Below, in pieces: positions 23,761-61,141 of a DNA stretch of 64,000 nucleotides (positions within the stretch are counted from its first letter, which is position 1; each line of letters begins with the position of its first letter). Both the position numbers and the translations under genes were made by a program. The DNA lies in the IMG/VR virus record IMGVR_UViG_3300042340_000379, positions 124,001-188,000 of that record. One strand, written 5' to 3'. The notes beneath the pieces were generated by a model, which saw only the letters and a program-made list of their open reading frames with translations, was not told where the DNA came from and ran no database searches.

Positions 23761-23775
23761 TTTGTATAATACAAA

Positions 23776-41700: not shown

Positions 41701-42854
41701 GTTCTTTAGAATCAGCCATTAGTAAAGAGGAAGTGTATAAAGGCTATTCTCAAATGGCAGAGCTGGCTGGAGTATTTGATGTTAGTCGTGATGAATCTAA
41801 CATGCTTTCTTTAGCCATGGCAGCTAAACCTGACGGTAAGCAGTCTATCTTCGAGCAGCTTGCTGATTTGTCAGCTGGTCGCGCTAATGTTGAAGAGAAA
41901 TATAACCAAATTTCAGATATTCACCAGGAAATGAGTACTGCTACTGGAACTCGTAAACAGTTTCTAGAGCAGCATCTAGCTCTACTTGAAGGTTCACTTG
42001 ACTCTTATAGACAAGGAATTTCAACAAATGACACCAGCGCAGTAAGAACCGCACTGGCTGAAATTGGAAATAAAGAACGTCAATTTAGAACTGATCAGTT
42101 TAAAAAAGACGAGCGCGGCAGGCGGCTATTAATTCATAGCGCTGGAATGATGCACGTCGCGTCAGGTTCTCAAAGTATGGGCGTGGTCAATACGCTTGGT
42201 CTGTTTGCAGCCCCTGTTGTTGGAGCTGCTCTTATGAGTGGCGCTGGATTAGATGAGCGGCTAGTCCTGGGCGGGTACGATTTAATGCAGGGTCTATCTA
42301 CAGCTGAAGGATTTGCGGATAACAAAATGGCTCAGGCGACTAACAGCATGTTTATCATGAGCCGATTACGCCAGCAAATGGCCGAGCAAGAAAGTCTATT
42401 TCTAGGTTCTGTAAAAGGCGTAGCGACAGAAGCACTTTACACAGGCCTAGCAGGGCTCGCCAGCCAAGCGTCCACCAGCCTTATGCGAGCAGCCGGGGCG
42501 CGGCAGGCAGCAGGAGGTTTAGGATCCGCACTTGCTGAAGCAGTCGTGACAGCGGCTGCTTTAGCTTTTTCTCGTAAAGGAAGCCAGTATGGCGTTCAAG
42601 ACGAGGATTACAGTAGTCTAATGGCGCAATCTTTGTTAGACATGGCTCAGTCTACAGAGAACATGATACAAGCTATGATTGAGAGGGCCCAAGACATTGA
42701 GGTCGAAACAGAAGACCAAATTGTCACGTTTGACTTTGATGCATCTATGGCACCCACAGAATATGAAGAGCGGGTGACTGCTGGGTGGATTGAGTTCTCT
42801 GTTGCCTCTGATGAGTTTGATTCTGTCTACTCTGAAATTGGAAATTACGCTTAA
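32772..42854 (+). CDS. Giant protein with two-barrel RNA polymerase motifs (putative virion RNA polymerase / ejected protein)
   Basis: 3360 aa; GGDFDGD (DFDGD at 39606-39620, residues 2279-2283) preceded by VNRAGGP; hydrophobic Gly/Ala-rich C-terminus; located among virion genes. Confidence 0.7.
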   Translation: MDPLFPELDPALIDNQNSEVREQIRRLEKSTPEDIARQELTTPDLNSIGISRGFRLHYGEVSDRPGTRYNMLGQKIYEPPTLAMESQVGFYEPVSVRANVSLDQSLQVRAVNAIDSINYGRSVLTGQQRTVTSGLNTMFGRQFRSLMYDQQVRAAGLMGLSREDTRALLGEPAVREGLYQDAGFRTPSLESIMENMGTGMPSAERISDINRMGFYADRYADPESVQKLYREVNQLKNALGDGIKSVEKRYAYRKVNGMYEKVLVGLKVGVRNYNDLFDGMGLYSGTSAPAVERETAFNFTVDSKGQVIELNTNRVISGSLMALGPSSISTIVGSSLIGGEGRRQSSSATALGLLATYARSSELEARHGVVDGVFNTMIAQGEYGALGRVFAEALVSRNEKYVASRGLKFGEVAGQMLSSVGHKDFKKGIHELIESISYRGLEYYSSLHTVFKESFDENTARMELFRNRQSLLTAAFDPLLNYTGGEGSRFDGLIDTTMKRVVDLIQSDSSTQRLKIAGQDVDISLFDDLKVAALNMSPTGRSAYDLRKSQVSRSILQLMMSPFLMPHESGYSGSQSSSRLGLFAMSETRGQRGMYELFAISPSKHTHGMKSTKPGEYYKPIGSQSAKSSVMKYIGGFYKFDDTAAKVAEFYETKTLFAGMPSLKRAKLDDIQIHMQKAGYKSSREIIEKYRAEMQLKEDKDIEVLLMPFRKPEQISQRLKNLVGGRPMLEIATGLRRAVMSQSGQQLRSYFSGGDYGVSLDVGKALSGNIPAALNDIQYQQMEQERSRIIAELGLDEKKITPRQQSELSRLLTSRMREIETQFNEGGGYIQGKAARLTMVGMGVNMLSDFMLVNQEYVNNTAFGYLHHSKFRVSATQNVRYEGVGRVTEADPYFDWKTNRLAEVFKAGTSIYLSPTPLKNERAMEILKKTAQSMRSEFLARGISKRESDAQVRRTLQSNFKFLESVDIKDGEVTNATMRAGAYSFDGNDMRFQGELVGSSLRLGMLPTNNRQRLGETGLSGATSLDFFDVKIPGVIRSVSKGLVTVANDINFAPSSGGYEADINFLVTSDIPSGSRSSSLTKGPWSMYESESFWARAREQAIQHSFVSKQTAQEGVFGILSPTAFKGYNYEAGLDILRDAESRRDLLAIPADQTAFLLGIAFMEKGEKGQRLKAAMREYAKTQSLGSSVGLLLEDVNSGSSIEKMRNLMLSTPDIIEFAGGQSLDQMGDYLAQRFETGDFDPIKKSLNRIVGKALDKSVQMEQYVEGQSSLVRTFQEGDFSVRSAGLVADVLNTTRQLIYGGMTVGDDPLQGYALVDKEKGARVDRFIEDKDFRAATLDIAQKMGVRSLLPSQLKLEGALSSLKEGDELYSQVESMLYLMHGHFSTSPLVARASNMLPSRILVAAGSEDAVALEFHYSLNLSKREFGMLRGTGVDIEKFTDLQAAYGVVATHGSANSTSRMMQVISPFSTDKTQAGVAKTMSRLIEGYNDFSGKFKFLGSVGNLSLLDEVVRSMVTGKTDRTLQLMASYDLANRALRHQKGLGQFTEQTVMNVAGAFNPGSLDLDSASFSQLADLANIYGVKGNTKEELAKGLRETGPILGRGIPYYGPSRNPFEIKRMAMARAVIDLSKRQKQKGHGSLVFGVTSDNEDVRDIMKRERLSAYGFGYSDFRQALDLVSDTQTGRLLSDGNGDKDHVQRIAGRLQDHDRSVELMMEKAAGTSDTESFVDVLYKVVSGAQQVIENTERGSDDYKRAERLRSEVYQTKSLLMPFVQTARDGSKGIISLYDPTEMGGQLRFTGTPAIRLGLDVLSKVPAQFEDHISEVVDRQRQIWEILPEFQSIMDRLTTGPIMDANLGEISVIEEMQRLAIQSQEDAALLFGSVMAQRSQGEKIKYPGVSFVAVADYLATPMEAFVGSRVMGTGLDQVVRDAQASLNGEERRNNRWEAERERLLKRAVTHSQSTEKSVQNKFKLAQRRRMELLRQRVNIRKNLNENVGRLKEEQRVIKKTRERVFKQERGANYQAYRLDGLSQRYNHAQAEIYGARDNSQRELRELNPELNRLRKDTKFMQRQFVQNKLHQFVVEGQHVSIFNKEFIAGIGARDGVVQSELRSMIAQAPEGFVEGLSSGEISDQNYYDKFVSVLSKVDQQGQNIYRAELAGIESAMGHALRDGSGSRSDQRQIKKYMGRRAAFNQTQQIGFDFKPQEFAALQKLQSLTGYVNRAGGPSGGSIVNQQHSIQNVERLKNKQVSEGNQLSLALDGNQTALIVSMYGRFGVQGGDFDGDAYQLVFGFRDIQESLVKSINKRNQMEDSKLALELEMGSGEYGRDVLLRRAQLSNQIRVEQQGIDGLIGKLDNQFQMAGEQISQGVRRHVSSLTGVPLSIMLNKDVYSDEQVSNMIEQQRGITPGLTDFGDSYGGEATSYGFLFNDINQDLGSLNGSLGDYLDTKLEGKPYGLDKAQLSQFKQLTEEAMSKLDLVNSNASERAQAFGVELGTLNNLRMSLDTTQKFIQSAAGTVLDMKSFDLMQDAIGYVGTSLIGEGYNAITSMIGRSTLARTLAHGLGAESMVGLDTAALNLGGQIQERLDYLFAGGEKANTSSNIKEKFAVDEIKRTAYFAQEKSQQISGKLTMIQQMIRDSLKPKEAGGLIGAIVDNSADGEAFREKFDRLEKKEERLDALRNFVSTRAVTSMVDTNERGLINAFGAIFLMADYTKESSPEKMLSDKSDRYSVLRQTRELYEKQSSRLQQGKGLSSDLDTITRLRLQDPEFRDKMVNDDGFLIRQTVVDLINSATAQETTSKYLGYDANDRVRQANVIREQYIGALASERGLLDASSDFYFKNEQHQMAMMSALNIKEQDILGYTQGQVQNVFSDSNAAFKALTERTFVESTYLGMGQEDLEFSRNVIQAGRSLEFMEFGNQIAFAPFAAAQSENLVAIEQLMRRGKLDDPALMREVQINSSARLFDAIAKVSTKLTSQYGSLESAISKEEVYKGYSQMAELAGVFDVSRDESNMLSLAMAAKPDGKQSIFEQLADLSAGRANVEEKYNQISDIHQEMSTATGTRKQFLEQHLALLEGSLDSYRQGISTNDTSAVRTALAEIGNKERQFRTDQFKKDERGRRLLIHSAGMMHVASGSQSMGVVNTLGLFAAPVVGAALMSGAGLDERLVLGGYDLMQGLSTAEGFADNKMAQATNSMFIMSRLRQQMAEQESLFLGSVKGVATEALYTGLAGLASQASTSLMRAAGARQAAGGLGSALAEAVVTAAALAFSRKGSQYGVQDEDYSSLMAQSLLDMAQSTENMIQAMIERAQDIEVETEDQIVTFDFDASMAPTEYEERVTAGWIEFSVASDEFDSVYSEIGNYA

Positions 42855-49275: not shown

Positions 49276-49569
49276 CTAAGTTAAGCCAACGCGCTCATCA
49301 ATATGTTGCAGCAAAGTGTAAAGAACAGACAGCTGGTTTATTTCCATTGGTGATAAACCTCTTTCTTGCATTCTTCTTATATTACGAATAAGAAGATCAA
49401 AATGGCGCATATAGTAGAAATCAACTAACTGCCGAACAGCAAGGTCATGACTAAGCCCATGCTGTTCGGCAAACTCATCGATCGCTATTTTAACAGGGTC
49501 ACTAACTAATAGTCTGCACTTACTGTTTGCAGTTGTTCTGTGGCTTGCGAGTCTTGAGTCTTTTGGCAT
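49276..49569 (-). CDS. Ribbon-helix-helix-like small regulator
   Basis: RLLVSDPVKIAIDEFAEQHGLSHDLAVRQLVD strand-helix-helix pattern. Confidence 0.5.
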   Translation of the reverse strand: MPKDSRLASHRTTANSKCRLLVSDPVKIAIDEFAEQHGLSHDLAVRQLVDFYYMRHFDLLIRNIRRMQERGLSPMEINQLSVLYTLLQHIDERVGLT

Positions 49570-50007: not shown

Positions 50008-50785
50008 TTGTAAAATCCTTTATAGTCAGACTGTTTTTGATTTGATTATAGAGCTCAGTTTTTAAGTTTGTGCTCAAAGTAAAGTCAGGCATATAATCTA
50101 AAGTATAGCTTGAGAGCCCGTGAGAAGAAGTAAACCCAAAGCTGTAATCAATCATTAGCTTGTCAACAACTTCGATCGCTAACTTCTCGACACTCTTTGT
50201 TTCTACCGTAACCCCATACACAACACGGTCAGGTAGGGCTTTAAGTGCAGCGGGTGTAAGTGGTCTATACACATTTAAGCTCACAAATGGGTAGTCTTCT
50301 AGCAAAATTGTCTCTTCATCGAGAAGTCTCTGCCGTCGAGTTTTTTCAGCAAGTAGTAGTTTCAGTTCCCATTCATAAGGAAGTCCATTGTAAGGCTCGT
50401 TAACAAACCGGGCGACAACACTTTCTGAAAGACTAACCTCATCAGTCTGAGACCACAGCTCAAATGGCCCCTTTTGATAAACTGTTCCGTCATAAGCTTC
50501 TTCAAGCAAAGCAGGAGTCGCAGATGTTTCTTCCGAAAGTAAAACATAACTATGGATAAAATAAGCAAACTTTACTTCGAGTCGGTTAGGCCAAAGCGTC
50601 AGTGAAAGCTTGAATGGCCGATTTGATAAAGCTTCGAGAGACTGAAAGCGGAAAATTTTGTTGTCTAAAAGATTTAACTCATACTGCCATTGCTGATAGA
50701 GAAAGGGGTCGTCTAAAGATTCAGTCCTATAGAAAAGAGGAAACGTGTCTCCCTCAAAGTCAAAATCGCGGAAAGAAATTTGCAT
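49991..50785 (-). CDS. Hypothetical protein, possibly baseplate
   Basis: About 264 aa from ATG 50785; coupled to the PAAR-like gene. Confidence 0.55.
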   Translation of the reverse strand: MQISFRDFDFEGDTFPLFYRTESLDDPFLYQQWQYELNLLDNKIFRFQSLEALSNRPFKLSLTLWPNRLEVKFAYFIHSYVLLSEETSATPALLEEAYDGTVYQKGPFELWSQTDEVSLSESVVARFVNEPYNGLPYEWELKLLLAEKTRRQRLLDEETILLEDYPFVSLNVYRPLTPAALKALPDRVVYGVTVETKSVEKLAIEVVDKLMIDYSFGFTSSHGLSSYTLDYMPDFTLSTNLKTELYNQIKNSLTIKDFTNASLD

Positions 50786-50830
50786 GAAAAATCCCAAGCT
50801 GTACCTCTAAGTATAGCTTGGGATTTTCAT
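50784..50830. terminator. Long hairpin downstream of the parR-like gene, overlapping the next start codon
   Basis: ATGAAAAATCCCAAGCTGTAC / GTATAGCTTGGGATTTTCAT inverted repeat. Confidence 0.55.
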
Positions 50831-50847: not shown

Positions 50848-51138
50848 TTAATCGTCCATATCTAACTGTATATCAGAAAACTCAACCCCTCCTGTAGAAG
50901 GAGAAGATATTTTTGACTGCTGATATTCGTAAGCAGTTGGTGCATAGTTAGCCGAAAATGACGGGCTAGACGATCTAAGTTGGGGTTCCGGCATTTGTTG
51001 AGAAGTTCGATAGCTCCTAAGAAGAAAGGCAAATACTTCAACGTTAGTAACTTTTCTCGAGAATTCTTCTTTGCTTAGCTCCTGCCTGATGTTTTCTAAT
51101 TCTTCTTCTAGTTGACCCGTTAAAGCGATCTTTGCCAT
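50848..51138 (-). CDS. ParR-like centromere-binding adaptor
   Basis: 96 aa directly after parM; N-terminal strand-helix-helix, disordered linker, acidic/hydrophobic tail (FSDIQLDMDD). Confidence 0.6.
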   Translation of the reverse strand: MAKIALTGQLEEELENIRQELSKEEFSRKVTNVEVFAFLLRSYRTSQQMPEPQLRSSSPSFSANYAPTAYEYQQSKISSPSTGGVEFSDIQLDMDD

Positions 51139-51144
51139 CTTATC

Positions 51145-52200
51145 TTAGGCTCCCACTGTTACAGCATGTCGGTTTAAGTTATCCAATGCCATAATGTTAG
51201 CAAAATCAGGGTGCTGAGGAACATAAATTCCAGCATTTGCGGGAAGCCGACCTTTAAACAAGTAAGCACAGCCACCAAACAACATACGACCGGAAGTAGG
51301 AACAAACTGATTAAAGTTGTTTCGAATCTCACCTTGAACTAACTCAAAGAAGTTAGCAAGAGCATGCTTGGTAAGATCGGTGAAGTCGATCATCTCATTG
51401 TTGTCAGCAGGGTAAAAATAGGTAGAGCGCCCATTCTCTCCAGGAATAGGATTAGCCAGCGCAGTCATGACATCATCAAGGTCTAGTTGACCTCCAACAC
51501 GTTGGATCATCAAAGGATTGATTTTAATCATAGAAGCCAAAGCCTTACCACCAGCTAAAGTTGATCCTTTAACTCCATCATAGGAACTACGAAGTAGGAT
51601 GTTGTTGCGAGGGCCGATCGCAGTAATATCCAGTGTGCCGCCGCCAATGTCAGCGCCGATCACATTTCCGACAGAAGGAAGGTGGTTAAGTTCACGAGCC
51701 ATAATAATCGCGTCAACCCCTTCGGGCCGAGGAGCCTCAGGATAAATGCGAACTTTCATGTCAAATGTACCCTTGTCAGACGTATAGGTGTACTCAAAAG
51801 TATCAGTGAGTTTTTCGCGAAGGAACTCGCCTACAGTTCGGCCATCGGTTCGGCGCTTACTTGGGTCAGGTAGACTCCATTGAAGTACAACCTCGTAATT
51901 GGTTTTGTTTCCAATGGGGCCAAGAGTAGAAAGGAGAAAAGGAATAAAGTACTTGGGATCTAGCTTATCGCGGTTAACCAATCCACTCGCGGCGGCACCA
52001 TACTCAGAAGCGCGATCGCCAATATGAAAGCGACCAAAATCCCCCTCAACAATAATAGAGTCGCTGCCAGGGTCAATTGCGTCACCACCAGGAAAGATGG
52101 GAGCAACAATAGATTTTAGATAAATCGGCTGGGTGTGAATCCCATGACTAATAGCCAGAGTAGAAAAGTTGCCAACATCAATAGCGTGCTGAGTTTTCAT
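51145..52200 (-). CDS. parM: ParM/StbA-family actin-like ATPase
   Basis: Phosphate-1 AIDVGNFST, connect PEG, phosphate-2 ADIGGGTLD, adenosine LFGGCA, terminal P.FAN. Confidence 0.9.
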   Translation of the reverse strand: MKTQHAIDVGNFSTLAISHGIHTQPIYLKSIVAPIFPGGDAIDPGSDSIIVEGDFGRFHIGDRASEYGAAASGLVNRDKLDPKYFIPFLLSTLGPIGNKTNYEVVLQWSLPDPSKRRTDGRTVGEFLREKLTDTFEYTYTSDKGTFDMKVRIYPEAPRPEGVDAIIMARELNHLPSVGNVIGADIGGGTLDITAIGPRNNILLRSSYDGVKGSTLAGGKALASMIKINPLMIQRVGGQLDLDDVMTALANPIPGENGRSTYFYPADNNEMIDFTDLTKHALANFFELVQGEIRNNFNQFVPTSGRMLFGGCAYLFKGRLPANAGIYVPQHPDFANIMALDNLNRHAVTVGA

Positions 52201-52263
52201 ACAAAAATTTGGGTAATAAGTGTTCAACAGACTCCCTTAGTATAAGCTAAATTTTTGGGTTGT

Positions 52264-52408
52264 GGGCCATAAAAGGCCCGACGCGGGCCCTAATCGGACT
52301 TTCTAGGGCCCTAAAGGGCCCAACGCGGGACGTGAAGGGCCCTTCACGGGACATAGACGGCCCGACGCGGGCCCTAAAGAGACCAAAAAGGGCCCGTGAA
52401 GGGCCCTA
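52264..52408. repeat. parC-like array 1: about 14 GGGCCC/GGGAC-type boxes at 10-11 bp spacing, upstream of parM
   Basis: gggccataaaa-ggcccgacgc-gggccctaatc-ggactttcta-gggccctaaa-gggcccaacgc-gggacgtgaa-gggcccttcac... Confidence 0.75.
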
Positions 52409-52432
52409 GGCAAACTTGTATCGTACAAAAAC

Positions 52433-52816
52433 CTAAGCCCAGATTACATTCCCAGGGCGAAAGTTGGCATTAGTATCAATGCGCTTAAGCTGCAATCCGG
52501 CTGGCTCTCCTAGCTCTTGCTTAAATTCGCTATAAGAACCAAACTCAATCTTAACGCCCCGCTCCTGGTAATAAGGATCATGCTTGATCTGGGCTCGTAA
52601 ACTCTGCCACTTCTTATATAGATCCTCATTCGTCTGGCGGCTGCACTCGCAAACCCTAAGAGTCTTGTTGTATAAGGCGCGAGGACTAGCTTTTCTATCC
52701 TTCCCGCAGCTAATACATATAATAGAGTAGCGAGCGTCAGAACCGTAATCTCCAACCTCCCATCCATTAACGATTGAAGGAACCTGCTTTGTGGGTCGTC
52801 CGCGATATCGCTTCAT
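52433..52816 (-). CDS. Degenerate phage HNH-family protein with Zn ribbon
   Basis: CISCG..VCEC; YQERGVKI...F..ELG.P....KRIDTNANFRPGNVIWA, compared with the consensus DRIDN.G.Y.P.NCRWA. Confidence 0.65.
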   Translation of the reverse strand: MKRYRGRPTKQVPSIVNGWEVGDYGSDARYSIICISCGKDRKASPRALYNKTLRVCECSRQTNEDLYKKWQSLRAQIKHDPYYQERGVKIEFGSYSEFKQELGEPAGLQLKRIDTNANFRPGNVIWA

Positions 52817-53974: not shown

Positions 53975-54370
53975 ATGCAATCACTCACTTCCCTTACAGC
54001 AGAACGGGATTTTAAAAAGGCCTGTTCAGAAAAGTACCAAATGGTTTCCCTAGACAGGCGGCTTGTTTGTCAGGTAGCTCGAAAGCTACCTAAACAGCGC
54101 CGGATAAAAGCTATGGCCCACCTGCTAGAAGAGTACGGCAGGCAAGAGGCAGTTCCGACAGGCGAGCTAGTGGATAAGCTTTTTGCCCTGGATGCCGTTT
54201 ATAAAATTAACGACTTGGTAATCGGGGTAGATGTGACCCTCGATAAATCTCGAATTGTAGAAAAACGGCAAAAACTGTCTTCCTTATCTGAAGCCCACAA
54301 AGCTTTAGGTATCGACAGAACAATAGTGTTTTGTCCAAAGATCCATAAGGATCTTCAGTCTGCTCTCTAA
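53975..54370 (+). CDS. Hypothetical protein, possible PD-(D/E)xK-like fold
   Basis: GAGAACA leader; D.LFALD....IGVDVT...K pattern. Confidence 0.6.
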   Translation: MQSLTSLTAERDFKKACSEKYQMVSLDRRLVCQVARKLPKQRRIKAMAHLLEEYGRQEAVPTGELVDKLFALDAVYKINDLVIGVDVTLDKSRIVEKRQKLSSLSEAHKALGIDRTIVFCPKIHKDLQSAL

Positions 54371-54443
54371 ACCCTTTAATTCATAGCCGAGCCACAGGCT
54401 TAATTGTTCATGGCAAAACGCAAACATTACCTGGAGAACATCT

Positions 54444-54644
54444 ATGTCTTTTCATGGAATCTATTACAACCACGCCGCTTCAAACCAAGAGTGGATTCGT
54501 CGCTACACCAAAATTGTATGCATTGGCGCTTGTAAGTGCCAAGACGGGAAAAAGCGCGTGGCCTACATCGCCAGCTTTGGCGATCAGAACAAAGACTTCA
54601 TCCGCCGCAAAGAAGCTGAAGCTTGGATTCAATCTAAGCTCTAA
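54444..54644 (+). CDS. Small early-type hypothetical protein
   Basis: GGAGAACA RBS; 66 aa. Confidence 0.65.
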   Translation: MSFHGIYYNHAASNQEWIRRYTKIVCIGACKCQDGKKRVAYIASFGDQNKDFIRRKEAEAWIQSKL

Positions 54645-54662
54645 TCCCAATCTTTTTATCAT

Positions 54663-55216
54663 GCACGCCCAGTAAAGCCTGGGCTTTTTTGTGTCTAAAA
54701 CTATCTGGAGAACATCAAATGTCTACTCAAATCTTTTCCACTGCCCAAGCTTGCGCCGATGAAATCGCCAAGCTTCGCGCCCAGGGCGTTGCTTGCCGTC
54801 TTCAGAAAGTTGAAGGCGGTGGCTTCACCGTCGTTCTCATGAACGGTAAAGCCCAGCCTCAGAGCAAAACTAAAGCTAAAACTGATCCTGCTCCTCACAT
54901 CCAAATTCGCCAAACTCTCGATGGCGGCGTGTGGTGCAACAAGGGTGCAGGGTTCTACCCTGTCGTCAAGTTCACCTTGGATGAGGCTATCAAAGCTTTG
55001 ACTGATCGGTCTTACGTAAAGACCGACAAGAACCTGGATACGAAGAACTACAACACGACTTGGGAGTTTAGTCTTAAGTCTCTTGTAGAAAAGGATGAAG
55101 CTGAAGAGTGGGGCAATCAAAACGATATGGACGATGAGCTGTACATGAATCGCAACGGCCTCCTCTAGTCAACAACCTTTTATCACGCACGCCCAGTAAA
55201 GCCTGGGCTTTTTTGT
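54663..55216 (+). repeat. Intergenic repeat B: two identical 30 bp hairpin/T-run copies (54663-54692, 55187-55216)
   Basis: GCACGCCCAGTAAAGCCTGGGCTTTTTTGT. Confidence 0.9.
54719..55168 (+). CDS. Early-type hypothetical protein
   Basis: GGAGAACATCAA-ATG; 149 aa. Confidence 0.7.
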   Translation: MSTQIFSTAQACADEIAKLRAQGVACRLQKVEGGGFTVVLMNGKAQPQSKTKAKTDPAPHIQIRQTLDGGVWCNKGAGFYPVVKFTLDEAIKALTDRSYVKTDKNLDTKNYNTTWEFSLKSLVEKDEAEEWGNQNDMDDELYMNRNGLL

Positions 55217-55238: not shown

Positions 55239-55418
55239 ATGGCCCTCTTTCTCTTCATTCTCTTTTTCATTTCCCTCTGTCTTTTCTTTGCAGAGGACAA
55301 AGTAAGCCAACCCAGAATTACGCCTGACATGCTCCTTAGCAAAAAAGGCAAGCCTCTATATGGGGCAACTTTGCAGGCTCGCATCGAAAAGCTAGAGCGA
55401 GCTGGGTACATCCTTTAG
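55239..55418 (+). CDS. 59 aa membrane-anchored protein sharing a 31 aa motif with the downstream polymerase
   Basis: Not in the ORF track; GGAGAAC RBS; MALFLFILFFISLCLFFAEDKVSQPRITPDMLLSKKGKPLYGATLQARIEKLERAGYIL. Confidence 0.75.
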   Translation: MALFLFILFFISLCLFFAEDKVSQPRITPDMLLSKKGKPLYGATLQARIEKLERAGYIL

Positions 55419-55492
55419 TTCACAGCCGAGCCACAGGCTTAATTGTTCATGGCAATTTTCAAGCAACAACTAATCAACTGGAGAACAAACCC

Positions 55493-58400
55493 ATGAAATC
55501 CTTCACCAAATCTCTGAATTCTTTTGTTACCCGCTCCTTCTCTGTGGGTAAGCGCCAAATGATCTCTAAGGTCAAAATCGTTCACTCTAAGCGCGAGTTC
55601 ATCTCGCGTGTTTCTGGCACCTTTCGCCAGCGCTTGAACCCTGCTACTCCAAAGTCCATTTTTGCTTGGGACGATGTTCAGCTCTCCTTAGCCTTTACTT
55701 ATGGCCAAGGTTCTCTAGGAATCAAAGCTGACCGCGCCAACGCTGGCATTGGGTTTGGTAGTGATACCAAACCTAAATCTAAATCTGTTAAGTCCGATTC
55801 CATCAAAATCGCACACACCTTTAAGGAGATCCTCGCCCAAACCAAAGCTACCGCTGTCAAAGTCTTCGAGGCCATTTCCACCGTTTCTAAACTGATTACT
55901 CCCGATCTTCTGCTCTCTTCTACAGGTAAGCAGCTCTATGGAGCTGCTCTTAAAAACCGGATTGCCAAACTTGTTCGTGAGGGCTACGCAGCCCCTGTTT
56001 CTCAACCTGCAGCGGTAAAGGCCGTTGACTTCATGGCGCTTGCTCAAGAGCGCTGCGCCCAAAGCCTTGCTGCGATCGAAGCAGCTATGGGCTTCACATC
56101 CACGGGCACCGTTGTGGCCATGCTTCAATCCGGCCAGGAGCCTGCGCCCATTGCGCGGCAGTCCGCCTCAAATATGGAGAACATCTCATTGTTTGAACTC
56201 AGGGCAAAAGAATTTCCAGCTCCTTCTGTCGAGGAGCTAATGTCTGACCTAAATGGCGATCGCGCCACCCGCGCTGAAAAGTGCAAAGCCATCTTGGCTA
56301 AGCACAACCTCAACACAGTTGGTGAGCTGATCGCTCGCGGCATGGTGTCTCGCACCCGCAAAGACTTCTGGCTCGATAGTGCAAGCACTGCGTTCAGTGT
56401 GATGCTACTGGGCCACACTCTTGGCCAAATGCCCGCGCCTCTGGACTTCAAGGCTGGGAATACCTACCTGGTAGGTTTCCCTCTGTTTGATCGCACCTCT
56501 GGCGACAAGCAGATTTCCCCGTACAAGTGCGTCATAGGAGATATCGATCTCCTGATGGCGTCTGTTCGTAGAGAAGAGCACGACATAAAGAACCTATCTT
56601 CTCCTGCTACCAAGAAGGTGTTTAAGAAGCACTTTAAGGTGCTAGAAGATAACTGCAAAGCCCTGGGCCTGTGGTTGTCTAAGGACGAAGTGGCTAACAT
56701 GGCCGCTGCGTTGGCCATTAATGAAGTGGCTACCAAGCCCACCACTTTCGCGGTGCTGGCTTCCCACCTCTGCGAAGTCCTTGATGCTATGGGCATGATG
56801 CCCAACCGCGTGTATGCGGTGAATGCTGCGTGGAACCTTCCCCGCTACAAAGCGGATCGCGTTATTGTGCGTAAGTTGGTAACCGCACTGCTGCGGGCCC
56901 AAGAGGGCATCGGCATGACAGGGTTCAAGTTCATCGACATGTCCACCAGCGAGCAAACTGGTGAGCTATTTGATGAAGTCGTTATCTGTGGCCAACGCTT
57001 TGTCATGGATGACGAAGGCGTTATCTTTGATGACGCAGGTACATCAAAACGGCTAAACCAGATAATGTTGGCTGCTCCCATTAAGGTAGGCCGCAGTCTA
57101 CACCCCAACGAGTTCTCTATCTTGAGCGCTCACGACGTGTTGTTGTATCTGCTGGACAACATTGTGCTGCCCATGCTCAACCGAAAGGATGTCAAATCTG
57201 ACAAGAGCTTGGAAATCAGCCGTGTTGAGGAAACCAACGCTCGTGCTGCCCAGTCCATCAAATCGTTTATTGGCAAATCCATGCCTCTAAACGAGCGGGC
57301 TGTTGCGCTTGGTGTTGAAGATGCTGCCTCCAGCATTCTGACCAGCGGCGAAATCAGCTGCGTTGTCAAGTGGCATCAATCTCTCTTCCGTCGCAACATT
57401 GCGGCTGAGGGTTCAGCAGAGATCGCCATCTTCAAAGAAGGCATGCTAGTTGGGCCTGATAGTCCCTACAAACGCTCGGCTGATGCTACCGAGTATATGA
57501 TCTTTAGCCAAATGGAGTTAAAGACCTCCACCAATTTCACCGACTATCACCCTCTCATCGAGCCTATGATCGCTCATGGCAAAGTGATTCAGCCTTTTGG
57601 CAACATGAATGCTGTAAGCCTTTCTGCTCACGGTACTCACTATGCCAACCTTGATGTGAGCATTCAGAAAGAAGCTGTCAAAGCTTTCTGGGCTAACCAA
57701 GGCCTTGATGAGCAACAGCTGCGCTCTAAGTTCAACCTTGAAGGTGTAGTCGGTGATGTGTGGATGCACATTGCTGAAGAAACCCTCAACTTCTTGTCCT
57801 ACAAGGGCTCTAAGCGTTTCAAGCGCTCGGCTAACTTGTACGCTCAAGTCACCAGCTTCGCGTTTGAAGAGACCAGCCGCTTCCAGTGGTCTGGTCACGT
57901 TGATCACCAGATCACCGGCCTGGCGCTCAAGGCTGTGTTAGCTCCTAGCTACGTTTTCTCTGGGCCTGGTATGGCCTATATGAACTCGCACAAGCGTGCT
58001 CAATACGAGATGCGCTACCCCTTGGCTGGTGGCATGCATGACTACTACGATCGCGCTGCTGTGTTCAGTAACTTCGCGATTGATGATACTGCTATCATCA
58101 CCAATCCTCTCACGGGCTGGAGCCATATTGACCTGGACATCAAAGTCCGGGAAGGGCAGGAGACTGGCTTGTTTATCGTGAACGAACATGGCCATCAGGT
58201 TCCTCTAAAAGCTGAGCACAATGGTGTGCTTTGCAAAATTCGTTTCCGCACTGTCGATAAGTTCTCCGTTAACGGCGTATTGGAGTGTCGCCTCTTTTAT
58301 AAAGTGTCTGAGTACGACTTCAAACTGCGGGCTGGCTATAAAGCCATGACTACCTATCATGACGGGTCGATCTTTGACCATAACGCCTACGCTCCCGAGT

Positions 58401-60982
58401 GGGACATCATCATCCCTGGTGATGCCAACAAAACCCTCGACCTTTTAACTTGCTTCCTCCCCGAGGCTGCTGAGTCATTCGGTCGCGCTCCTGAGGGCAC
58501 TTTGGTTGATGGCGTTGATGTACGTGCCCTGCTGCGTTCACTTAATGCTGAGGCATTTGGTCGTGAGGGCATCATTAAAGATGCGCCCAACGACAGCCTC
58601 TATGTCAACATGCTCATGTTGAATGAGGGTCGCTACGAGCAACTCCGTAAGTTGTTCATGACCGCATTTGGTCAAGTTATATGGATGAGCGTTGAGTCTG
58701 TAGAAATGCAGATCTTTGTCAACAAATTCTATTCTGCCAACGTTGCTGGTGGTGGCAAATGGCGCGAGCTGTCTGAAGCTGAGCTGGAAACAGTTGCTAA
58801 AGATGGTCTACCCAAGGGTGCTCGCGGCTTCTGCGACACCGCTGATATCAATGACCAGAGCAACATTCTGGTTACCTACACTGAGAACGGGAAGTGCATG
58901 TCCCTTCACCGTCAGTGGGTCTACGCTTCCACGCCCGAGCTTGGCATGTACATGCTAGGTAAGCCTGAGTACACAACTGTGAGCCAGGCCGTTTCTGAAT
59001 CCAGCGTTATGGGCAACGTCATCTATGACCTGGCCCTACGTAGCAACAAAGCTGCGTTGGAATTCGTCAACCGTGGCGAAATCAACCGCGTGCGCTACTC
59101 TCTTATCCATCGCCTAGCAAAAGGCCTTCCTATTGCTATTGATGGCGGCGAAATTCCTGTGATGAAAATCCAGGGCTCGATCGCTGAAATCGTGGGTAGT
59201 TGCAGCGCCAACTTGGCTGCTGCATACGCGGAAGGGCCTAACCAGTTCTTCCAAGTACTCCTGGAAATCTGCCAGGACAAAGTGCTGCGCTTTGAAGCCG
59301 ACAACAGCACCTGGGTTAGCATCTACCTCCCTCTTCTCGCTTCTTACGGCGGGCAGGATCTTGAATCCAACGAAGGCATGACTCTTGCTAGCAAAGTCTA
59401 TGAGTTGATGACCTCTTGGTACAACGGGGCCGACCCTAAGTCTCAGGGCATCAAAGTCATCGCGGGGGAAATCTCCAAGATGATGAATAAGTTGGCCGAT
59501 GGTGGCCGGATGCAGAAGTCTTTGACCTACGGCCCTAAAGGCGTAGGTTTCAAGGTCGCCGCATTGCCCAACATTCCTACTGGGGAAGTGTGGGTCTATG
59601 CTGGCGGTGAAGTCTTTGCCAAAATGCGCAAGCTGTTTGGCAAAGACTTTGCTGAAAACGCCAAAACTGGCGATAGCTACATCGGTCTGGTGCGTGCGCC
59701 TATGACTCGTGTTGCTGTGCTCAAAGTCGTAGTCATCACCAAAGATGACAACCGCGCCTTGGCCTACAAACTCAATGGCGTGCAGGGCTACATCAGCCCA
59801 TTCTCCCAGTATTTCAACATGGGAGACTTTGACGGTGATGGTGACTTGTCTATGGACGTTAGTGATATCGTCCGTAGCGGTGAGCTTCAACAGGACTCTT
59901 TTGCGTCCATGCTCAAGTTCCAGCGGGAAACCCTGGGCTACGACATGATGCTACCCGAGTTCTGGAAGTCTGCTGCACCCGAGCAGTACTACGCCGACCA
60001 CTTCTATGTACAGAGCTACACCTCTGTCATGGCTAAAATCGGTGGGCGCGGCCTGAACTTGGAATCTTCCGAGAAGGCCAACGTCATCACCCGTGCTCAA
60101 CTGCTAGCCGGTGAGCACGGTGCAATCGGTCAGCAGACCGGCTATGTGTCCAGCTCATATCAAACCCAGTTCTTTATCACGCTGGCAGCTGAGATTCTGG
60201 GTCACCACAACGTAGCTGCATTCGAGTGGATTAAAGGCTCCACCTATCAAACCCAGGCCTTGTACGAAGTAGCGTTAGGCGGCTACTCTCCTGATATGTG
60301 CCGCGTGGCGTTTGGTCTTCTTGACCGCGCCTTCCGTTTGAGCACCACTCAAGATTGGTGGCTAAAGCGTGTTGACGCTGAGGTTGCCGGTATGTTGCTT
60401 GACGGTACCAAGCACACAGCTTCTTCTCTCCTAGGTACCGAGCCTATGGATAAAGAGAAGACCCTGTTCACTTCCCTGAGTGAAGGCCAAGTGTTCCCCG
60501 CAATGCAGGCTTGCGGTTTTGGCTGGAATGGCTTTGAGGATGACCGCAACCAAGTGCAACAGTTTGTTAAAGCTGCTGCGCTCGCTGGCGTTGCTAAAAA
60601 GCGTGTCAGCGAAATCAAGAACGATGATGCTGGAATTGGTAGCGGCACCTACCAAAAGCTGGTGAAAACCTACGGCAAGAACATGGCCCTTGTCATGTGT
60701 CTTGCTCAACGTCTAATGGACATCAGCCGTAATAAGGCTGAGTTTGGTAAGGACTACGACAACGAACTCCGCGCTGAACTCGACCAAATGCTCAAAGGTG
60801 TTAAAAGCGATTCTATTTCCGTCGATCTCTATCGTCGGATTGAGAAGACCCTAGACGACTCTGTGTCCGCAGAAGTCGTAAGCTATGACAGCGCTGCTAT
60901 CAACAAGCTTTGCCGCTTTGTTGAAACCGAAGACGCTGCTCCCATTACTCTGGAGGTTGCTGCCCAAGTTATCGCCAATTAA
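55493..60982 (+). CDS. Single-chain two-barrel DNA-dependent RNA polymerase candidate (non-virion / early)
   Basis: 1829 aa; beta'-like LVRAP and NMGDFDGD (DFDGD at 59825-59839, residues 1445-1449); beta-like FKLRAGYKAM...WDIIIP; GGAGAACA RBS. Confidence 0.8.
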   Translation: MKSFTKSLNSFVTRSFSVGKRQMISKVKIVHSKREFISRVSGTFRQRLNPATPKSIFAWDDVQLSLAFTYGQGSLGIKADRANAGIGFGSDTKPKSKSVKSDSIKIAHTFKEILAQTKATAVKVFEAISTVSKLITPDLLLSSTGKQLYGAALKNRIAKLVREGYAAPVSQPAAVKAVDFMALAQERCAQSLAAIEAAMGFTSTGTVVAMLQSGQEPAPIARQSASNMENISLFELRAKEFPAPSVEELMSDLNGDRATRAEKCKAILAKHNLNTVGELIARGMVSRTRKDFWLDSASTAFSVMLLGHTLGQMPAPLDFKAGNTYLVGFPLFDRTSGDKQISPYKCVIGDIDLLMASVRREEHDIKNLSSPATKKVFKKHFKVLEDNCKALGLWLSKDEVANMAAALAINEVATKPTTFAVLASHLCEVLDAMGMMPNRVYAVNAAWNLPRYKADRVIVRKLVTALLRAQEGIGMTGFKFIDMSTSEQTGELFDEVVICGQRFVMDDEGVIFDDAGTSKRLNQIMLAAPIKVGRSLHPNEFSILSAHDVLLYLLDNIVLPMLNRKDVKSDKSLEISRVEETNARAAQSIKSFIGKSMPLNERAVALGVEDAASSILTSGEISCVVKWHQSLFRRNIAAEGSAEIAIFKEGMLVGPDSPYKRSADATEYMIFSQMELKTSTNFTDYHPLIEPMIAHGKVIQPFGNMNAVSLSAHGTHYANLDVSIQKEAVKAFWANQGLDEQQLRSKFNLEGVVGDVWMHIAEETLNFLSYKGSKRFKRSANLYAQVTSFAFEETSRFQWSGHVDHQITGLALKAVLAPSYVFSGPGMAYMNSHKRAQYEMRYPLAGGMHDYYDRAAVFSNFAIDDTAIITNPLTGWSHIDLDIKVREGQETGLFIVNEHGHQVPLKAEHNGVLCKIRFRTVDKFSVNGVLECRLFYKVSEYDFKLRAGYKAMTTYHDGSIFDHNAYAPEWDIIIPGDANKTLDLLTCFLPEAAESFGRAPEGTLVDGVDVRALLRSLNAEAFGREGIIKDAPNDSLYVNMLMLNEGRYEQLRKLFMTAFGQVIWMSVESVEMQIFVNKFYSANVAGGGKWRELSEAELETVAKDGLPKGARGFCDTADINDQSNILVTYTENGKCMSLHRQWVYASTPELGMYMLGKPEYTTVSQAVSESSVMGNVIYDLALRSNKAALEFVNRGEINRVRYSLIHRLAKGLPIAIDGGEIPVMKIQGSIAEIVGSCSANLAAAYAEGPNQFFQVLLEICQDKVLRFEADNSTWVSIYLPLLASYGGQDLESNEGMTLASKVYELMTSWYNGADPKSQGIKVIAGEISKMMNKLADGGRMQKSLTYGPKGVGFKVAALPNIPTGEVWVYAGGEVFAKMRKLFGKDFAENAKTGDSYIGLVRAPMTRVAVLKVVVITKDDNRALAYKLNGVQGYISPFSQYFNMGDFDGDGDLSMDVSDIVRSGELQQDSFASMLKFQRETLGYDMMLPEFWKSAAPEQYYADHFYVQSYTSVMAKIGGRGLNLESSEKANVITRAQLLAGEHGAIGQQTGYVSSSYQTQFFITLAAEILGHHNVAAFEWIKGSTYQTQALYEVALGGYSPDMCRVAFGLLDRAFRLSTTQDWWLKRVDAEVAGMLLDGTKHTASSLLGTEPMDKEKTLFTSLSEGQVFPAMQACGFGWNGFEDDRNQVQQFVKAAALAGVAKKRVSEIKNDDAGIGSGTYQKLVKTYGKNMALVMCLAQRLMDISRNKAEFGKDYDNELRAELDQMLKGVKSDSISVDLYRRIEKTLDDSVSAEVVSYDSAAINKLCRFVETEDAAPITLEVAAQVIAN

Positions 60983-60987
60983 TCGCT

Positions 60988-61141
60988 AGGGCCCTATAGG
61001 GCCCGCAAAAGTCCGATTGGGGCCCAACGCGGGCCCTTTACGTCCCGTGAAAGTCCTTTTAGGGCCCGCGTTGGGCCTTTCATGTCCCGTCGAGGGCCCT
61101 AAACGTCCCGCAAAAGTCCGATTAGGGCCCGTCAAGGGCCC
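60988..61141. repeat. parC-like array 2: phased GGGCCC/GTCCC boxes, inverted relative to array 1
   Basis: AAAGTCCGATTAGGGCCCG is the exact reverse complement of CGGGCCCTAATCGGACTTT at 52284-52302; 10-11 bp period. Confidence 0.75.

What the first reader, a model, noticed from the sequence alone, without database searches (positions are those of the whole stretch)
50848..52408. Complete ParMRC-like partition cassette in a large myophage
Seen in sequence: actin-fold motifs, a small downstream adaptor-like gene and an upstream helically phased GGGCCC array. Knowledge: this is the layout of type II plasmid partition systems, and some large phages such as c-st persist as plasmid prophages with their own segregation systems. 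Inference: a phage-plasmid lifestyle, or filament-driven positioning of phage DNA during infection.
Basis: partly seen in the sequence, partly recalled or inferred. Interest (0 to 1): 0.65.

Follow-up and report, generated by a model that had tools for sequence, protein, structure and literature searches.

The report
Actin-like DNA-mover in giant cyanophage
A 208-kb cyanobacterial myophage carries a plasmid-style actin-like motor gene, its small adaptor gene and a helically phased GGGCCC repeat array, and the same array recurs six more times at operon heads in the phage's right arm, so the adaptor may also regulate those operons.

Summary
Window 51145-52200(-) encodes a ParM-type actin-like ATPase: Pfam, PHROG 'partition protein', and an AF2 model whose best PDB matches are all ParM-type proteins. 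Six bases downstream lies a 96-aa gene. It has a conserved N-terminal strand-helix-helix part, a variable linker and a conserved acidic tail. A controlled complex prediction places that tail in the ParM cleft (ipSAE 0.73; best control 0.00). Upstream, 52264-52406 holds 14 consecutive GGGCCC-like hexamers, one per 10.5 bp.

All are intergenic, 14-22 slots each, oriented toward the downstream gene. They sit at the heads of unknown-function (ORFan) operons over 25.6 kb of the right arm.

The genome is a 207,855-bp cyanobacterial myophage, distantly like Ma-LMM01. It has its own replication genes and no integrase over the Pfam cut-off.

My best reading is a ParMR(C)-like DNA-moving machine whose adaptor also acts as an operator-binding regulator of seven operons, as StbA, omega and KorB do. 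Whether it serves a plasmid-like carrier state or genome positioning during infection stays open. No plasmid or host-genome relative was found. I rate it a new variant of a known kind.

The parts
51145..52200 (-). parM-like gene, 351 aa actin-fold ATPase. The ORF is open back to a TTG at 52227, but the ATG at 52200 matches the length of all relatives.
   Evidence: Pfam ALP_N and Alp7A_like_C, and PHROG 691 'partition protein'. AF2 model pLDDT 87. Foldseek PDB matches: pCBH ParM 3e-16, BtParM, Ta0583, Alp7A (TMq 0.74), pSK41 ParM, R1 ParM, CorM. Nucleotide-binding motifs invariant in 11 homologues.
50848..51138 (-). parR-like adaptor gene, 96 aa. It has an N-terminal strand plus two helices (about 45 aa), a P/S/T-rich variable linker and a conserved acidic-hydrophobic C-terminal tail.
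   Evidence: Gene order is kept in 5 relatives. In the complex prediction, residues 60-96 dock on ParM with ipSAE 0.73 against a best control of 0.00; partner pLDDT is 64-72 and runs agree in at least 80% of contacts. There is no Pfam, PHROG or NCBIfam family. Only 4 representatives exist among 1.84 billion proteins.
52264..52406 (-). Array 1 (parC-like): 14 consecutive hexamer slots (GGGCCC, one-mismatch variants and GTCC-core variants) at alternating 10/11-nt steps. It lies between the upstream gene's stop and the parM promoter region.
   Evidence: A relative with 83% ParM identity (L002) keeps 9 such slots with the same phasing but different spacer sequences.
52239..52249 (-). Conserved TAGCTTATACT element with a -10-like TATACT. 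It starts 19 nt after the last hexamer, so the end of the array falls at the -35 position.
   Evidence: Sequence read. The same element is present in L002 and L003 upstream of parM. It occurs once in the genome. Promoter function is inferred.
52415..52429 (.). 15-bp palindrome of the genome-wide TTTGTAnnnTACAAA class (one mismatch here), between the upstream gene's stop and array 1.
   Evidence: 19 sites in the genome against about 1 in shuffles. A copy is kept upstream of parM in all five relatives.
50784..50830 (-). Intrinsic-terminator-like hairpin with a U-run directly after parR. It marks parM-parR as a two-gene unit.
   Evidence: RNA fold: -26.6 kcal/mol, z = -6.2, and 0 of 200 shuffles fold as well.
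60989..61141 (+). Array 2, of the same kind: 15 slots, starting 7 nt after the stop of the 1829-aa ORF and heading the next + strand ORFan operon. Arrays 3-7 lie beyond the window at genome 188988-189140, 191035-191208, 193271-193485, 196598-196750 and 201785-201916 (window coordinate = genome minus 124000).
52433..52816 (-). Conserved upstream neighbour, 127 aa: an AT-hook-like N-terminus, a Cys4 ribbon and a degenerate HNH-like C-terminus. It is an alternative candidate DNA-binding protein.
   Evidence: PHROG HNH-endonuclease families at 7e-9 to 7e-7, partial matches only. It is 60% and 57% identical in L002 and L003.
49276..49569 (-). 97-aa protein at the end of the same leftward gene block. 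Its N-terminal pattern looks ribbon-helix-helix-like, making it another candidate DNA binder.
   Evidence: No family hit. It is 49% identical to its L251 counterpart, where ParR is only 20% identical. The fold assignment comes from reading the sequence only.

Best explanation
This is a working type II (ParMRC-like) DNA-moving module built into the genome of a jumbo cyanobacterial myophage.

Proposed mechanism:
- Dimers of the 96-aa adaptor bind the palindromic GGGCCC-type hexamers, one per helical turn. They coat one face of each 150-215-bp array and form a solenoid-like segrosome.
- The adaptor's conserved acidic-hydrophobic C-terminal tail inserts into the cleft between subdomains IA and IIA of the ParM-like ATPase.
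- ATP-driven insertional polymerisation then pushes or positions phage genomes inside the cell.

The same array stands at seven operon heads and abuts -10-like elements. The adaptor is therefore also proposed to repress those promoters, its own included, as StbA of R388, omega of pSM19035 and KorB of RK2 do.

Shown by tools: the ParM fold and intact motifs, the gene order and its conservation, the predicted tail-to-cleft docking, and the phasing, number, orientation and positions of the arrays.

Inferred: that the adaptor rather than another protein binds the arrays, that ParM polymerises, and the biological role.

On the role, I lean slightly toward positioning or spreading of replicating phage genomes during the intracellular cycle (as AlpAC does in CGP3 and PhuZ does in other jumbo phages) over stable plasmid-prophage inheritance.
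For: ParM identity:
- Pfam and PHROG hits.
- tblastn matches to annotated ParM/StbA genes of Nostocales plasmids at 23-28% identity over 92-96% of the length for most matches.
- AF2 model with pLDDT 87, whose top 25 PDB matches are ParM-type proteins.
- Invariant ATP-binding motifs.

Adaptor:
- The small gene follows immediately in all five relatives.
- It has a three-part architecture with a conserved tail.
- Complex prediction ipSAE 0.73 against a best control of 0.00. That mark was reached by 58 of 80 solved complexes and 2 of 110 mismatched pairs; these counts hold only roughly because my own alignments were used. Partner pLDDT is at least 63 and runs agree in at least 80% of contacts. The interface covers ParM 17-27, 170-183 and 278-344.

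Arrays:
- 14-22 consecutive 10/11-nt slots per array.
- Strong enrichment over chance.
- Hexamer and phase are kept but spacers diverge in L002.
- A 62%-identical relative (L003) and a 39%-identical one (L251) carry different upstream repeats together with more diverged adaptor N-termini. Co-evolving ParR/parC pairs would look like this.
- The neighbouring HNH-like protein is equally similar in L002 and L003 (60% and 57%), so it does not track the change of array type.
- -10-like elements lie 15-19 nt after the last hexamer of arrays 1, 5 and 6.

Precedents:
- AlpAC/alpS (PMC4446434).
- StbA, with 11-bp-cycle repeats at five promoters (bioRxiv 10.1101/2022.04.29.490116).
Against: - Nothing here tests DNA binding.
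- The adaptor's ribbon-helix-helix fold is not established. hhalign against cyanobacterial RHH-type ParR candidates gives 3% probability, PDB sequence searches find nothing, and Atlas leads score only 0.81-0.88.
- Two other small candidate DNA-binding proteins lie in the same gene block (52433-52816 and 49276-49569).
- Seven arrays are atypical for type II systems, which usually have one parC.
- Adjacent GGGCCC pairs can also form hairpins, and some are followed by T-runs, so an RNA-level or terminator role is possible.
- A high complex score can reflect resemblance to solved ParM-ParR complexes rather than real binding.
- ALP_N scores just below Pfam's cut-off.
Confidence: 0.6

Rival explanations
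1. Plasmid-prophage (phage-plasmid) segregation. The phage persists as a low-copy extrachromosomal element in dividing cyanobacterial cells. ParMR plus the arrays ensure its inheritance.
For: A partition-type cassette is present. No tyrosine or serine recombinase passes the cut-off: PF00589 gives only 15 bits at genome 92293-92436, and PF00239 gives nothing. Two TnpB/IS605-type insertion elements are 70-73% identical to copies on cyanobacterial plasmids, which hints at long residence in host cells. From my own knowledge, dispersed centromeres are known in the linear plasmid-prophage N15.
Against: No relative was found among 72,556 plasmids (closest ParM 26%), in 401 cyanobacterial genomes (5 distant hits at 25-29%) or in the species-representative genome collection. 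No plasmid-type replication initiator or repressor was identified, although these were not searched exhaustively. The genome encodes its own DNA polymerase, primase, helicases and an rIIA-like protein, as large virulent phages do.
Confidence: 0.3
2. The GGGCCC arrays are operators for a different phage regulator, such as the 127-aa Zn-ribbon/HNH-like protein or the 97-aa RHH-like protein. They control a seven-operon regulon of which parMR is just one member. The adaptor's own DNA site, if any, is something else, for example the conserved palindrome.
For: Seven arrays sit at operon heads with the same orientation. Other candidate DNA binders are adjacent. The TTTGTAnnnTACAAA palindrome upstream of parM is the only non-coding element kept in all five relatives.
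Against: The palindrome occurs at 19 sites genome-wide, often 1-40 nt before start codons. It therefore looks like a general expression signal, not a centromere. The array type changes together with the fast-evolving adaptor N-terminus, while the HNH-like protein stays equally conserved. One site per helical turn directly upstream of parM is the classical parC layout.
Confidence: 0.2
3. The arrays are REP/BIME-like or PeSL-like intergenic elements: multi-hairpin terminators or insulators, and recombination boundaries of shuffled ORFan cassettes. They act at the RNA or recombination level and have no link to ParR.
For: GGGCCC is self-complementary, and neighbouring hexamers form 6-bp G+C stems. 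Several are scored as terminator-like, including the first two hexamers of array 1 just after the upstream gene. As RNA, array 1 folds at -102 kcal/mol, z = -5.5. The arrays flank cassettes of genes with no family hit.
Against: Hairpin function does not require an unbroken 10.5-nt register over 14-22 slots, and many slots (AAGTCC, CGTCCC) are not self-complementary. L002 keeps the hexamers and the phase while the spacers drift. No Rfam family matches.
Confidence: 0.1
4. ParMR has been repurposed as a cytoskeleton that no longer moves DNA, as with CorMR in Anabaena. It might, for example, manipulate host cell shape, membranes or thylakoids during infection.
For: CorMR shows that cyanobacterial ParMR pairs can lose parC and DNA binding and take on a new role (bioRxiv 10.1101/2025.06.27.661541). 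CorM is among the structural matches (9rmi).
Against: Unlike CorMR, this locus has a textbook parC-like array directly upstream, kept in close relatives. The adaptor has a short DNA-binding-type N-terminus and no recognisable membrane-binding feature.
Confidence: 0.07

Closest known systems
ParMRC of plasmid R1 and pSK41 (type II partition)
   Same: The gene order is iterons, then actin-like ATPase, then small adaptor. The iterons have a period of one helical turn (10 x 11 bp in R1, from my own knowledge) and overlap the promoter. The adaptor's C-terminal peptide is predicted to sit in the ParM IA/IIA cleft, as in PDB 4a62, which is among the structural matches.
   Different: Structural matches share only 12-17% identity. 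The adaptor has no detectable sequence relation to any ParR family. The repeat core is a palindromic hexamer. There are seven arrays rather than one. The host replicon is a 208-kb phage.
Alp7A/Alp7R/alp7C of Bacillus plasmid pLS20
   Same: The Pfam Alp7A_like_C domain scores over its cut-off. Alp7A (5ec0) gives the highest query-normalised TM-score of the top hits, 0.74.
   Different: Identity is 14%. ALP_N scores below its cut-off. The adaptors show no similarity.
AlpC/AlpA/alpS of Corynebacterium glutamicum prophage CGP3 (PMC4446434)
   Same: This is a phage-encoded actin-like protein with a co-transcribed DNA-binding adaptor and many short repeats in the operon's promoter region. It is needed for efficient phage DNA replication, so it sets a precedent for a role outside plasmid maintenance.
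   Different: In CGP3 the adaptor gene comes before the motor gene. The alpS repeats are 7-bp TTAAnnG motifs concentrated at one locus. CGP3 is an integrated prophage.
Centromere-binding proteins that are also global repressors: StbA of R388 (bioRxiv 10.1101/2022.04.29.490116); omega of pSM19035 and KorB of RK2 (own knowledge)
   Same: Arrays of short repeats with an ~11-bp cycle occur both at the partition operon and at several other promoters on the same replicon.
   Different: None of those systems uses an actin-like motor: StbA has no cognate NTPase partner, and omega and KorB work with ParA-type ATPases. All are on plasmids. Binding is demonstrated there but not here.
Actin-like proteins of other large phages, e.g. 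Gp506 of Bacillus phage G
   Same: Gp506 is the best viral structural match (E 1e-16, TMq 0.74). Both phages are very large myophages.
   Different: Identity is 16%. Only about four phage proteins in BFVD match at this level. To my knowledge, none has a described adaptor or centromere.

Membership tests
Type II (ParMRC) partition system | Actin-fold ATPase with intact phosphate-1, phosphate-2 and adenosine motifs | tested here: met
Type II (ParMRC) partition system | Small adaptor gene immediately downstream of the ATPase gene in one operon | tested here: met
   There is a 6-nt gap between the genes and a terminator hairpin after the second gene. The order is kept in five relatives.
Type II (ParMRC) partition system | The adaptor's C-terminus binds the ATPase | tested here: met
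   This rests on prediction only: ipSAE 0.73 against a best control of 0.00. It is not a measurement.
Type II (ParMRC) partition system | The adaptor is a ribbon-helix-helix DNA-binding dimer | tested here: inconclusive
   The sequence pattern fits. However, hhalign gives 3% probability, there is no PDB or family hit, and Atlas leads are weak.
Type II (ParMRC) partition system | A cis-acting array of helically phased repeats upstream of the operon, overlapping its promoter | tested here: met
   14 slots at a 10.5-nt period, with a -10-like element 19 nt after the last slot.
Type II (ParMRC) partition system | The adaptor binds the repeats; the ATPase forms dynamic filaments; the cassette stabilises a replicon | not testable with these tools
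   These need EMSA, polymerisation assays and plasmid-stability assays.
Type II (ParMRC) partition system | A single centromere next to the operon (typical rather than strictly defining) | tested here: not met
   There are seven arrays spread over 25.6 kb.
Phage-plasmid | Phage structural genes together with plasmid maintenance genes, and no integrase | tested here: inconclusive
   Structural genes are present and so is the partition cassette. No recombinase passes the cut-off. No plasmid replication initiator was identified among the proteins scanned, but Rep families were not searched specifically.
Phage-plasmid | Found as an extrachromosomal replicon in host assemblies or cultures | tested here: not met
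   No close relative was found in the plasmid collection, in 401 cyanobacterial genomes or in the species-representative genomes. These are samples, so absence is not proven.
AlpAC/alpS (CGP3-type) | Adaptor gene upstream of the actin-like gene; TTAAnnG repeats | tested here: not met
   Here the gene order is motor then adaptor, and the repeats are GGGCCC-type. The comparison is with PMC4446434.

The most novel reading that the evidence does not exclude
The 96-aa adaptor coats about 110 phased sites in seven arrays. It serves both as the master repressor of the phage's ORFan right arm and as a multi-site kinetochore for ParM filaments. Together they give a jumbo cyanophage a mitosis-like apparatus that lets its genome persist and be inherited as an extrachromosomal element. 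That would be a molecular basis for cyanophage pseudolysogeny or carrier states.
Probability: 0.2. Interest if true: 0.8.

Novelty: new variant of a known kind. Interest (0 to 1): 0.6.

Why it matters
Cytoskeleton-driven genome positioning in phages is known mainly from the tubulin PhuZ of nucleus-forming jumbo phages and from one actin-like case, AlpAC of CGP3. This locus offers a complete actin-type motor/adaptor/site set, readable from sequence, in a large cyanobacterial myophage.

Its twist is that the site is reiterated at seven operon heads. That links DNA movement to regulation of a block of unknown genes.

It gives concrete reagents (one 96-aa protein, one 351-aa protein, a 143-bp array) to test two open questions. 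The first is how large cyanophage genomes are organised in polyploid, slowly dividing hosts. The second is whether plasmid-like carriage underlies cyanophage pseudolysogeny.

The adaptor family has only four representatives in 1.84 billion proteins. This also illustrates how fast such adaptors evolve.

Tried and rejected
- **Relatives by protein.** The word search found only five ParM relatives on 2-4-kb contigs. Peptide-pattern scans of viral, metagenome and genome contigs found none.
- **Relatives by array pattern.** A pattern scan of viral contigs found nothing. The 18-base GGGCCC pattern in metagenome and genome contigs returned mostly chance hits in G+C-rich genomes. No hit shared proteins with the cassette or with most of the phage; four weak hits to unrelated proteins are. 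A few moderate-G+C contigs do carry similarly phased arrays, which I did not follow up.
- **First ParM structure model.** With 4 sequences it was unusable (pLDDT 46). I replaced it with an 11-sequence model.
- **PDB sequence searches.** These gave nothing for ParM, the adaptor or the 97-aa protein.
- **Array-adjacent proteins.** Pfam and PHROG scans of ten such proteins gave no hits, and NCBIfam on the neighbourhood gave nothing.
- **Rfam.** No family matched.
- **Promoter scan.** The sigma-70 consensus scan found no more sites than in shuffles, so the promoter statements rest on reading -10-like elements by eye.
- **Sequencing runs.** There is therefore no read-level evidence on genome ends, circular forms or expression.
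- **Sample accessions.** None was found in the paper library.
- **Paralogues.** The genome has no paralogues of ParM, the adaptor or the two other small proteins.
- **Rejected idea: the palindrome as centromere.** The TTTGTAnnnTACAAA palindrome occurs at 19 sites, often directly before start codons.
- **Rejected idea: collagen-like coding repeats.** This explains some 9-nt-period GGGCCC arrays in other contigs but not these arrays. These are intergenic with a 10.5-nt period, and the short ORFs called across them are artefacts of the repeat.
Full report
**What is there**

The window is bases 124001-188000 of a 207,855-bp IMG/VR virus record, rated 97% complete and 'linear'.

On the minus strand, 51145-52227 is a 360-aa ORF. 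Its relatives are all 350-351 aa and begin at the position of the internal ATG. The gene is therefore most likely 51145-52200, 351 aa.
- Pfam gives ALP_N at 4.7e-5 (24.1 bits, cut-off 26.3) and Alp7A_like_C at 8.7e-5 (22.8 bits, cut-off 22).
- PHROGs gives family 691 'partition protein' at 3.7e-8 over nearly the full length.
- tblastn against plasmids finds 17 records, all cyanobacterial (Nostoc, Tolypothrix, Aulosira, Microchaete, Allocoleopsis). Identity is 23-28% (mostly 25-27%), over more than 90% of the query for 15 of them. Many are annotated ParM/StbA.
- An 11-sequence alignment gives an AF2 model with pLDDT 87 and pTM 0.83.
- The best PDB matches of that model are all ParM-type actin-like proteins: pCBH ParM, BtParM, Ta0583, Alp7A (TMq 0.74), pSK41 ParM, R1 ParM, Alp12 and the cyanobacterial CorM. 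MreB, MamK and FtsA score lower.
- The nucleotide-binding columns D8/G10/N11, D184-T189 and G309/G310 are invariant in all 11 sequences.

**The adaptor**

Six bases after the parM stop, 50848-51138(-) encodes 96 aa. It matches no Pfam, PHROG or NCBIfam family at a meaningful level. An exhaustive profile search of 1.84 billion representatives found only the four proteins the profile was built from.

Alignment of the five known versions shows three parts:
- a conserved N-terminal ~45 residues with a strand-helix-helix pattern;
- a variable P/S/T-rich linker;
- a conserved C-terminal tail, G-V-E-F-S-D-I-Q-L-D-M-D-D in the window.

This is the architecture of ParR-type adaptors, by established knowledge of R1 and pSK41 ParR. 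I could not establish the ribbon-helix-helix fold:
- hhalign against RHH-type candidates that follow parM in two cyanobacterial genomes gives 3% probability;
- the PDB sequence search is empty;
- Atlas neighbours with a family are RHH types, but only at 0.81-0.83.

A controlled complex prediction of ParM with adaptor residues 60-96 gave ipSAE 0.73, 0.73 and 0.66, against 0.00 for all three controls. Partner pLDDT was 64-72, and the runs agreed in at least 80% of contacts. That mark was reached by 58 of 80 solved complexes and 2 of 110 mismatched pairs; these counts hold only roughly because my own alignments were used. The contacting ParM residues (17-27, 170-183, 278-344) belong to subdomains IA and IIA in the model's topology. 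That is the cleft where the R1 ParR peptide sits in 4a62, which is itself among the structural matches. This supports binding but does not show it. It may partly reflect the model's memory of solved ParM-ParR complexes.

A strong hairpin with a U-run follows the adaptor gene (-26.6 kcal/mol, z = -6.2). parM-parR is therefore a two-gene unit.

**The array**

52264-52406 holds seven exact and three one-mismatch GGGCCC hexamers. TRF reports a 21-nt period. Read turn by turn, there are 14 consecutive slots at alternating steps of 10 and 11 nt, mean 10.5. Each slot holds GGGCCC, a one-mismatch variant or a GTCC-core variant.

The window has 21 exact GGGCCC against 9.5 +/- 2.7 in shuffles. The genome has 88 against about 28 expected. 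Of these, 56 lie in arrays, and the rest are at chance level.

Across relatives the picture is:

| Relative | ParM identity | Array upstream of parM |
|---|---|---|
| L252 | 99% | Same array, with two or three substitutions |
| L002 | 83% | Nine slots; same hexamers and phasing, different spacers |
| L003 | 62% | No GGGCCC array; other repeats |
| L251 | 39% | No GGGCCC array; other repeats |

The L002 result points to selection on hexamer and register, as expected for a protein-binding iteron array. In L003 and L251 the adaptor N-termini are also much more diverged, at 31% and 20% identity. The conserved neighbour upstream, a 127-aa Zn-ribbon/HNH-like protein, is equally similar in L002 and L003 (60% and 57%). 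It therefore does not track the change of array type. This is modest covariation evidence that the adaptor, and not that neighbour, reads the array.

The array is one of seven. Their genome coordinates are:
1. 176264-176406 (array 1)
2. 184989-185141 (window 60989-61141)
3. 188988-189140
4. 191035-191208
5. 193271-193485
6. 196598-196750
7. 201785-201916

Each has 14-22 unbroken 10/11-nt slots, about 110 slots in total. All are intergenic.

Arrays 2-7 lie between plus-strand operons of the right arm. Array 1 heads the minus-strand parMR unit. The asymmetric 21-nt unit (GGGCCC, then a GTCC-core slot) points toward the downstream gene in all seven, because array 1 is inverted on the plus strand.

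Terminator hairpins lie just upstream of arrays 4 and 6. -10-like hexamers (TATACT, TAAAAT, TAAAAT) lie 15-19 nt after the last hexamer of arrays 1, 5 and 6. That puts the end of each of these arrays at the -35 position (read by eye). Ten proteins encoded next to the arrays have no Pfam or PHROG family.

The arrays thus look like operator arrays at operon heads. There are plasmid precedents for a centromere-binding protein that also represses several promoters through repeat arrays with an ~11-bp cycle. StbA of R388 does so at five promoters. Omega of pSM19035 and KorB of RK2 are further examples from my own knowledge.

**Genome context**

The phage is a myophage:
- tail sheath (phrog_30392, 3e-52), major head protein (8e-51) and portal protein;
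- PAAR-like spike protein three genes from parR.

The capsid is 30-32% identical to those of the Microcystis phages Ma-LMM01 and MaMV, and of a Microcoleus phage. Two TnpB genes are 70-73% identical to copies on Nostocales and Microcystis plasmids. The host is therefore a cyanobacterium.

The genome encodes DNA polymerase, primase, several helicases, an rIIA-like protein and an RNA ligase/kinase. No tyrosine or serine recombinase passes its cut-off.

The block parM-parR-268 aa-PAAR is syntenic in relatives down to 39% ParM identity. The cassette is therefore an old, fixed part of this phage lineage, not a recent plasmid pick-up.

Among viral structure predictions, only about four phage proteins match the ParM model well. 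The best is Gp506 of the jumbo Bacillus phage G.

**Which biological role**

*Evidence for a plasmid-prophage role:*
- a partition cassette is present;
- no integrase was found;
- insertion elements are present.

*Evidence against it:*
- no relative appears in 72,556 plasmid records, in 401 cyanobacterial genomes (5 distant hits) or in the 185,579-species genome collection;
- the replication gene set is of the virulent type.

*Evidence for a role during the intracellular cycle:*
- CGP3's AlpAC/alpS is an actin-like protein, adaptor and repeats needed for efficient phage DNA replication;
- parMR carries, upstream of its array, the 15-bp palindrome TTTGTAnnnTACAAA, which occurs 19 times in the genome against about 1 expected. 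This palindrome precedes many replication-region genes and one head-module gene, so parMR seems wired into the general developmental programme.

CorMR shows that cyanobacterial ParMR pairs can be repurposed away from DNA. But CorMR lacks parC-like repeats, whereas this locus has them.

I therefore commit to the molecular model: an adaptor-coated phased array captured by ParM filaments, with the adaptor doubling as a repressor. I lean, without strong evidence, toward genome positioning during replication over stable plasmid inheritance.

**Limits**
- No tool here tests DNA binding, polymerisation or stability.
- All relatives are short contigs, so I could not see whether their own repeat types are also reiterated.

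**Verdict**
- Observation: confirmed and extended.
- Interpretation: partly supported.
- Novelty: a new variant of a known kind, namely a type II-like system in a jumbo cyanophage with seven dispersed, promoter-associated arrays.

Noticed in passing
window 23761-23775 and 52415-52429; 17 more sites in the genome (genome coordinates): The 15-bp palindrome TTTGTAnnnTACAAA occurs 19 times (up to 1 mismatch) against about 1 in shuffles. Most copies lie 1-250 nt upstream of start codons, some only 1-4 nt before the ATG. One copy is kept upstream of parM in all five relatives. It is probably a phage-specific promoter, operator or translational-operator signal.
   Followed up: partly
loci L114, L034, L088, L008, L071, L015 (metagenome contigs): Other moderate-G+C contigs carry GGGCCC arrays with 10-11-nt phasing, for example a perfect 21-nt tandem in L034. 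They share no proteins with this phage. Such arrays may be a wider class of protein-binding iterons. Arrays with a 9-nt period in L126 and L104 look like collagen-type coding repeats.
   Followed up: partly
window 49276-49569 (-): This 97-aa protein has an RHH-like N-terminal pattern and a strongly conserved C-terminal half. It is 49% identical to its L251 counterpart, so it evolves far more slowly than the adaptor. It is a candidate regulator, perhaps of the conserved palindrome.
   Followed up: partly
window 54368-54416 / 55407-55455 and 54639-54692 / 55163-55216: Two pairs of duplicated intergenic segments (92% and 87% identical), one containing a terminator hairpin. They suggest a local duplication of small-gene cassettes.
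   Followed up: no
window 32772-42854 (+), 55493-60982 (+); genome 102287-115492 (-): Giant ORFs of 3360, 1829 and 4401 aa. The first two have no Pfam hit. The third has only an N-terminal staphylococcal-nuclease domain. The 1829-aa ORF lies in a G+C-richer stretch (0.52 against about 0.44) and ends 7 nt before array 2.
   Followed up: partly
genome 86774-87964 (-) and 94900-96075 (+) (outside the window): Two TnpB/IS605-OrfB-type genes, the second 70-73% identical to copies on Nostocales and Microcystis plasmids. They help place the host and hint at residence time in host cells.
   Followed up: partly
window 52433-52816 (-): A 127-aa protein with an RGRP AT-hook-like start, four cysteines and a C-terminal HNH-like motif. 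By my reading of the sequence, Arg stands at the expected catalytic His position; this was not checked against a profile alignment. The gene is kept upstream of the array in L002, L003 and L252. It is probably a DNA-binding remnant of a homing endonuclease.
   Followed up: partly
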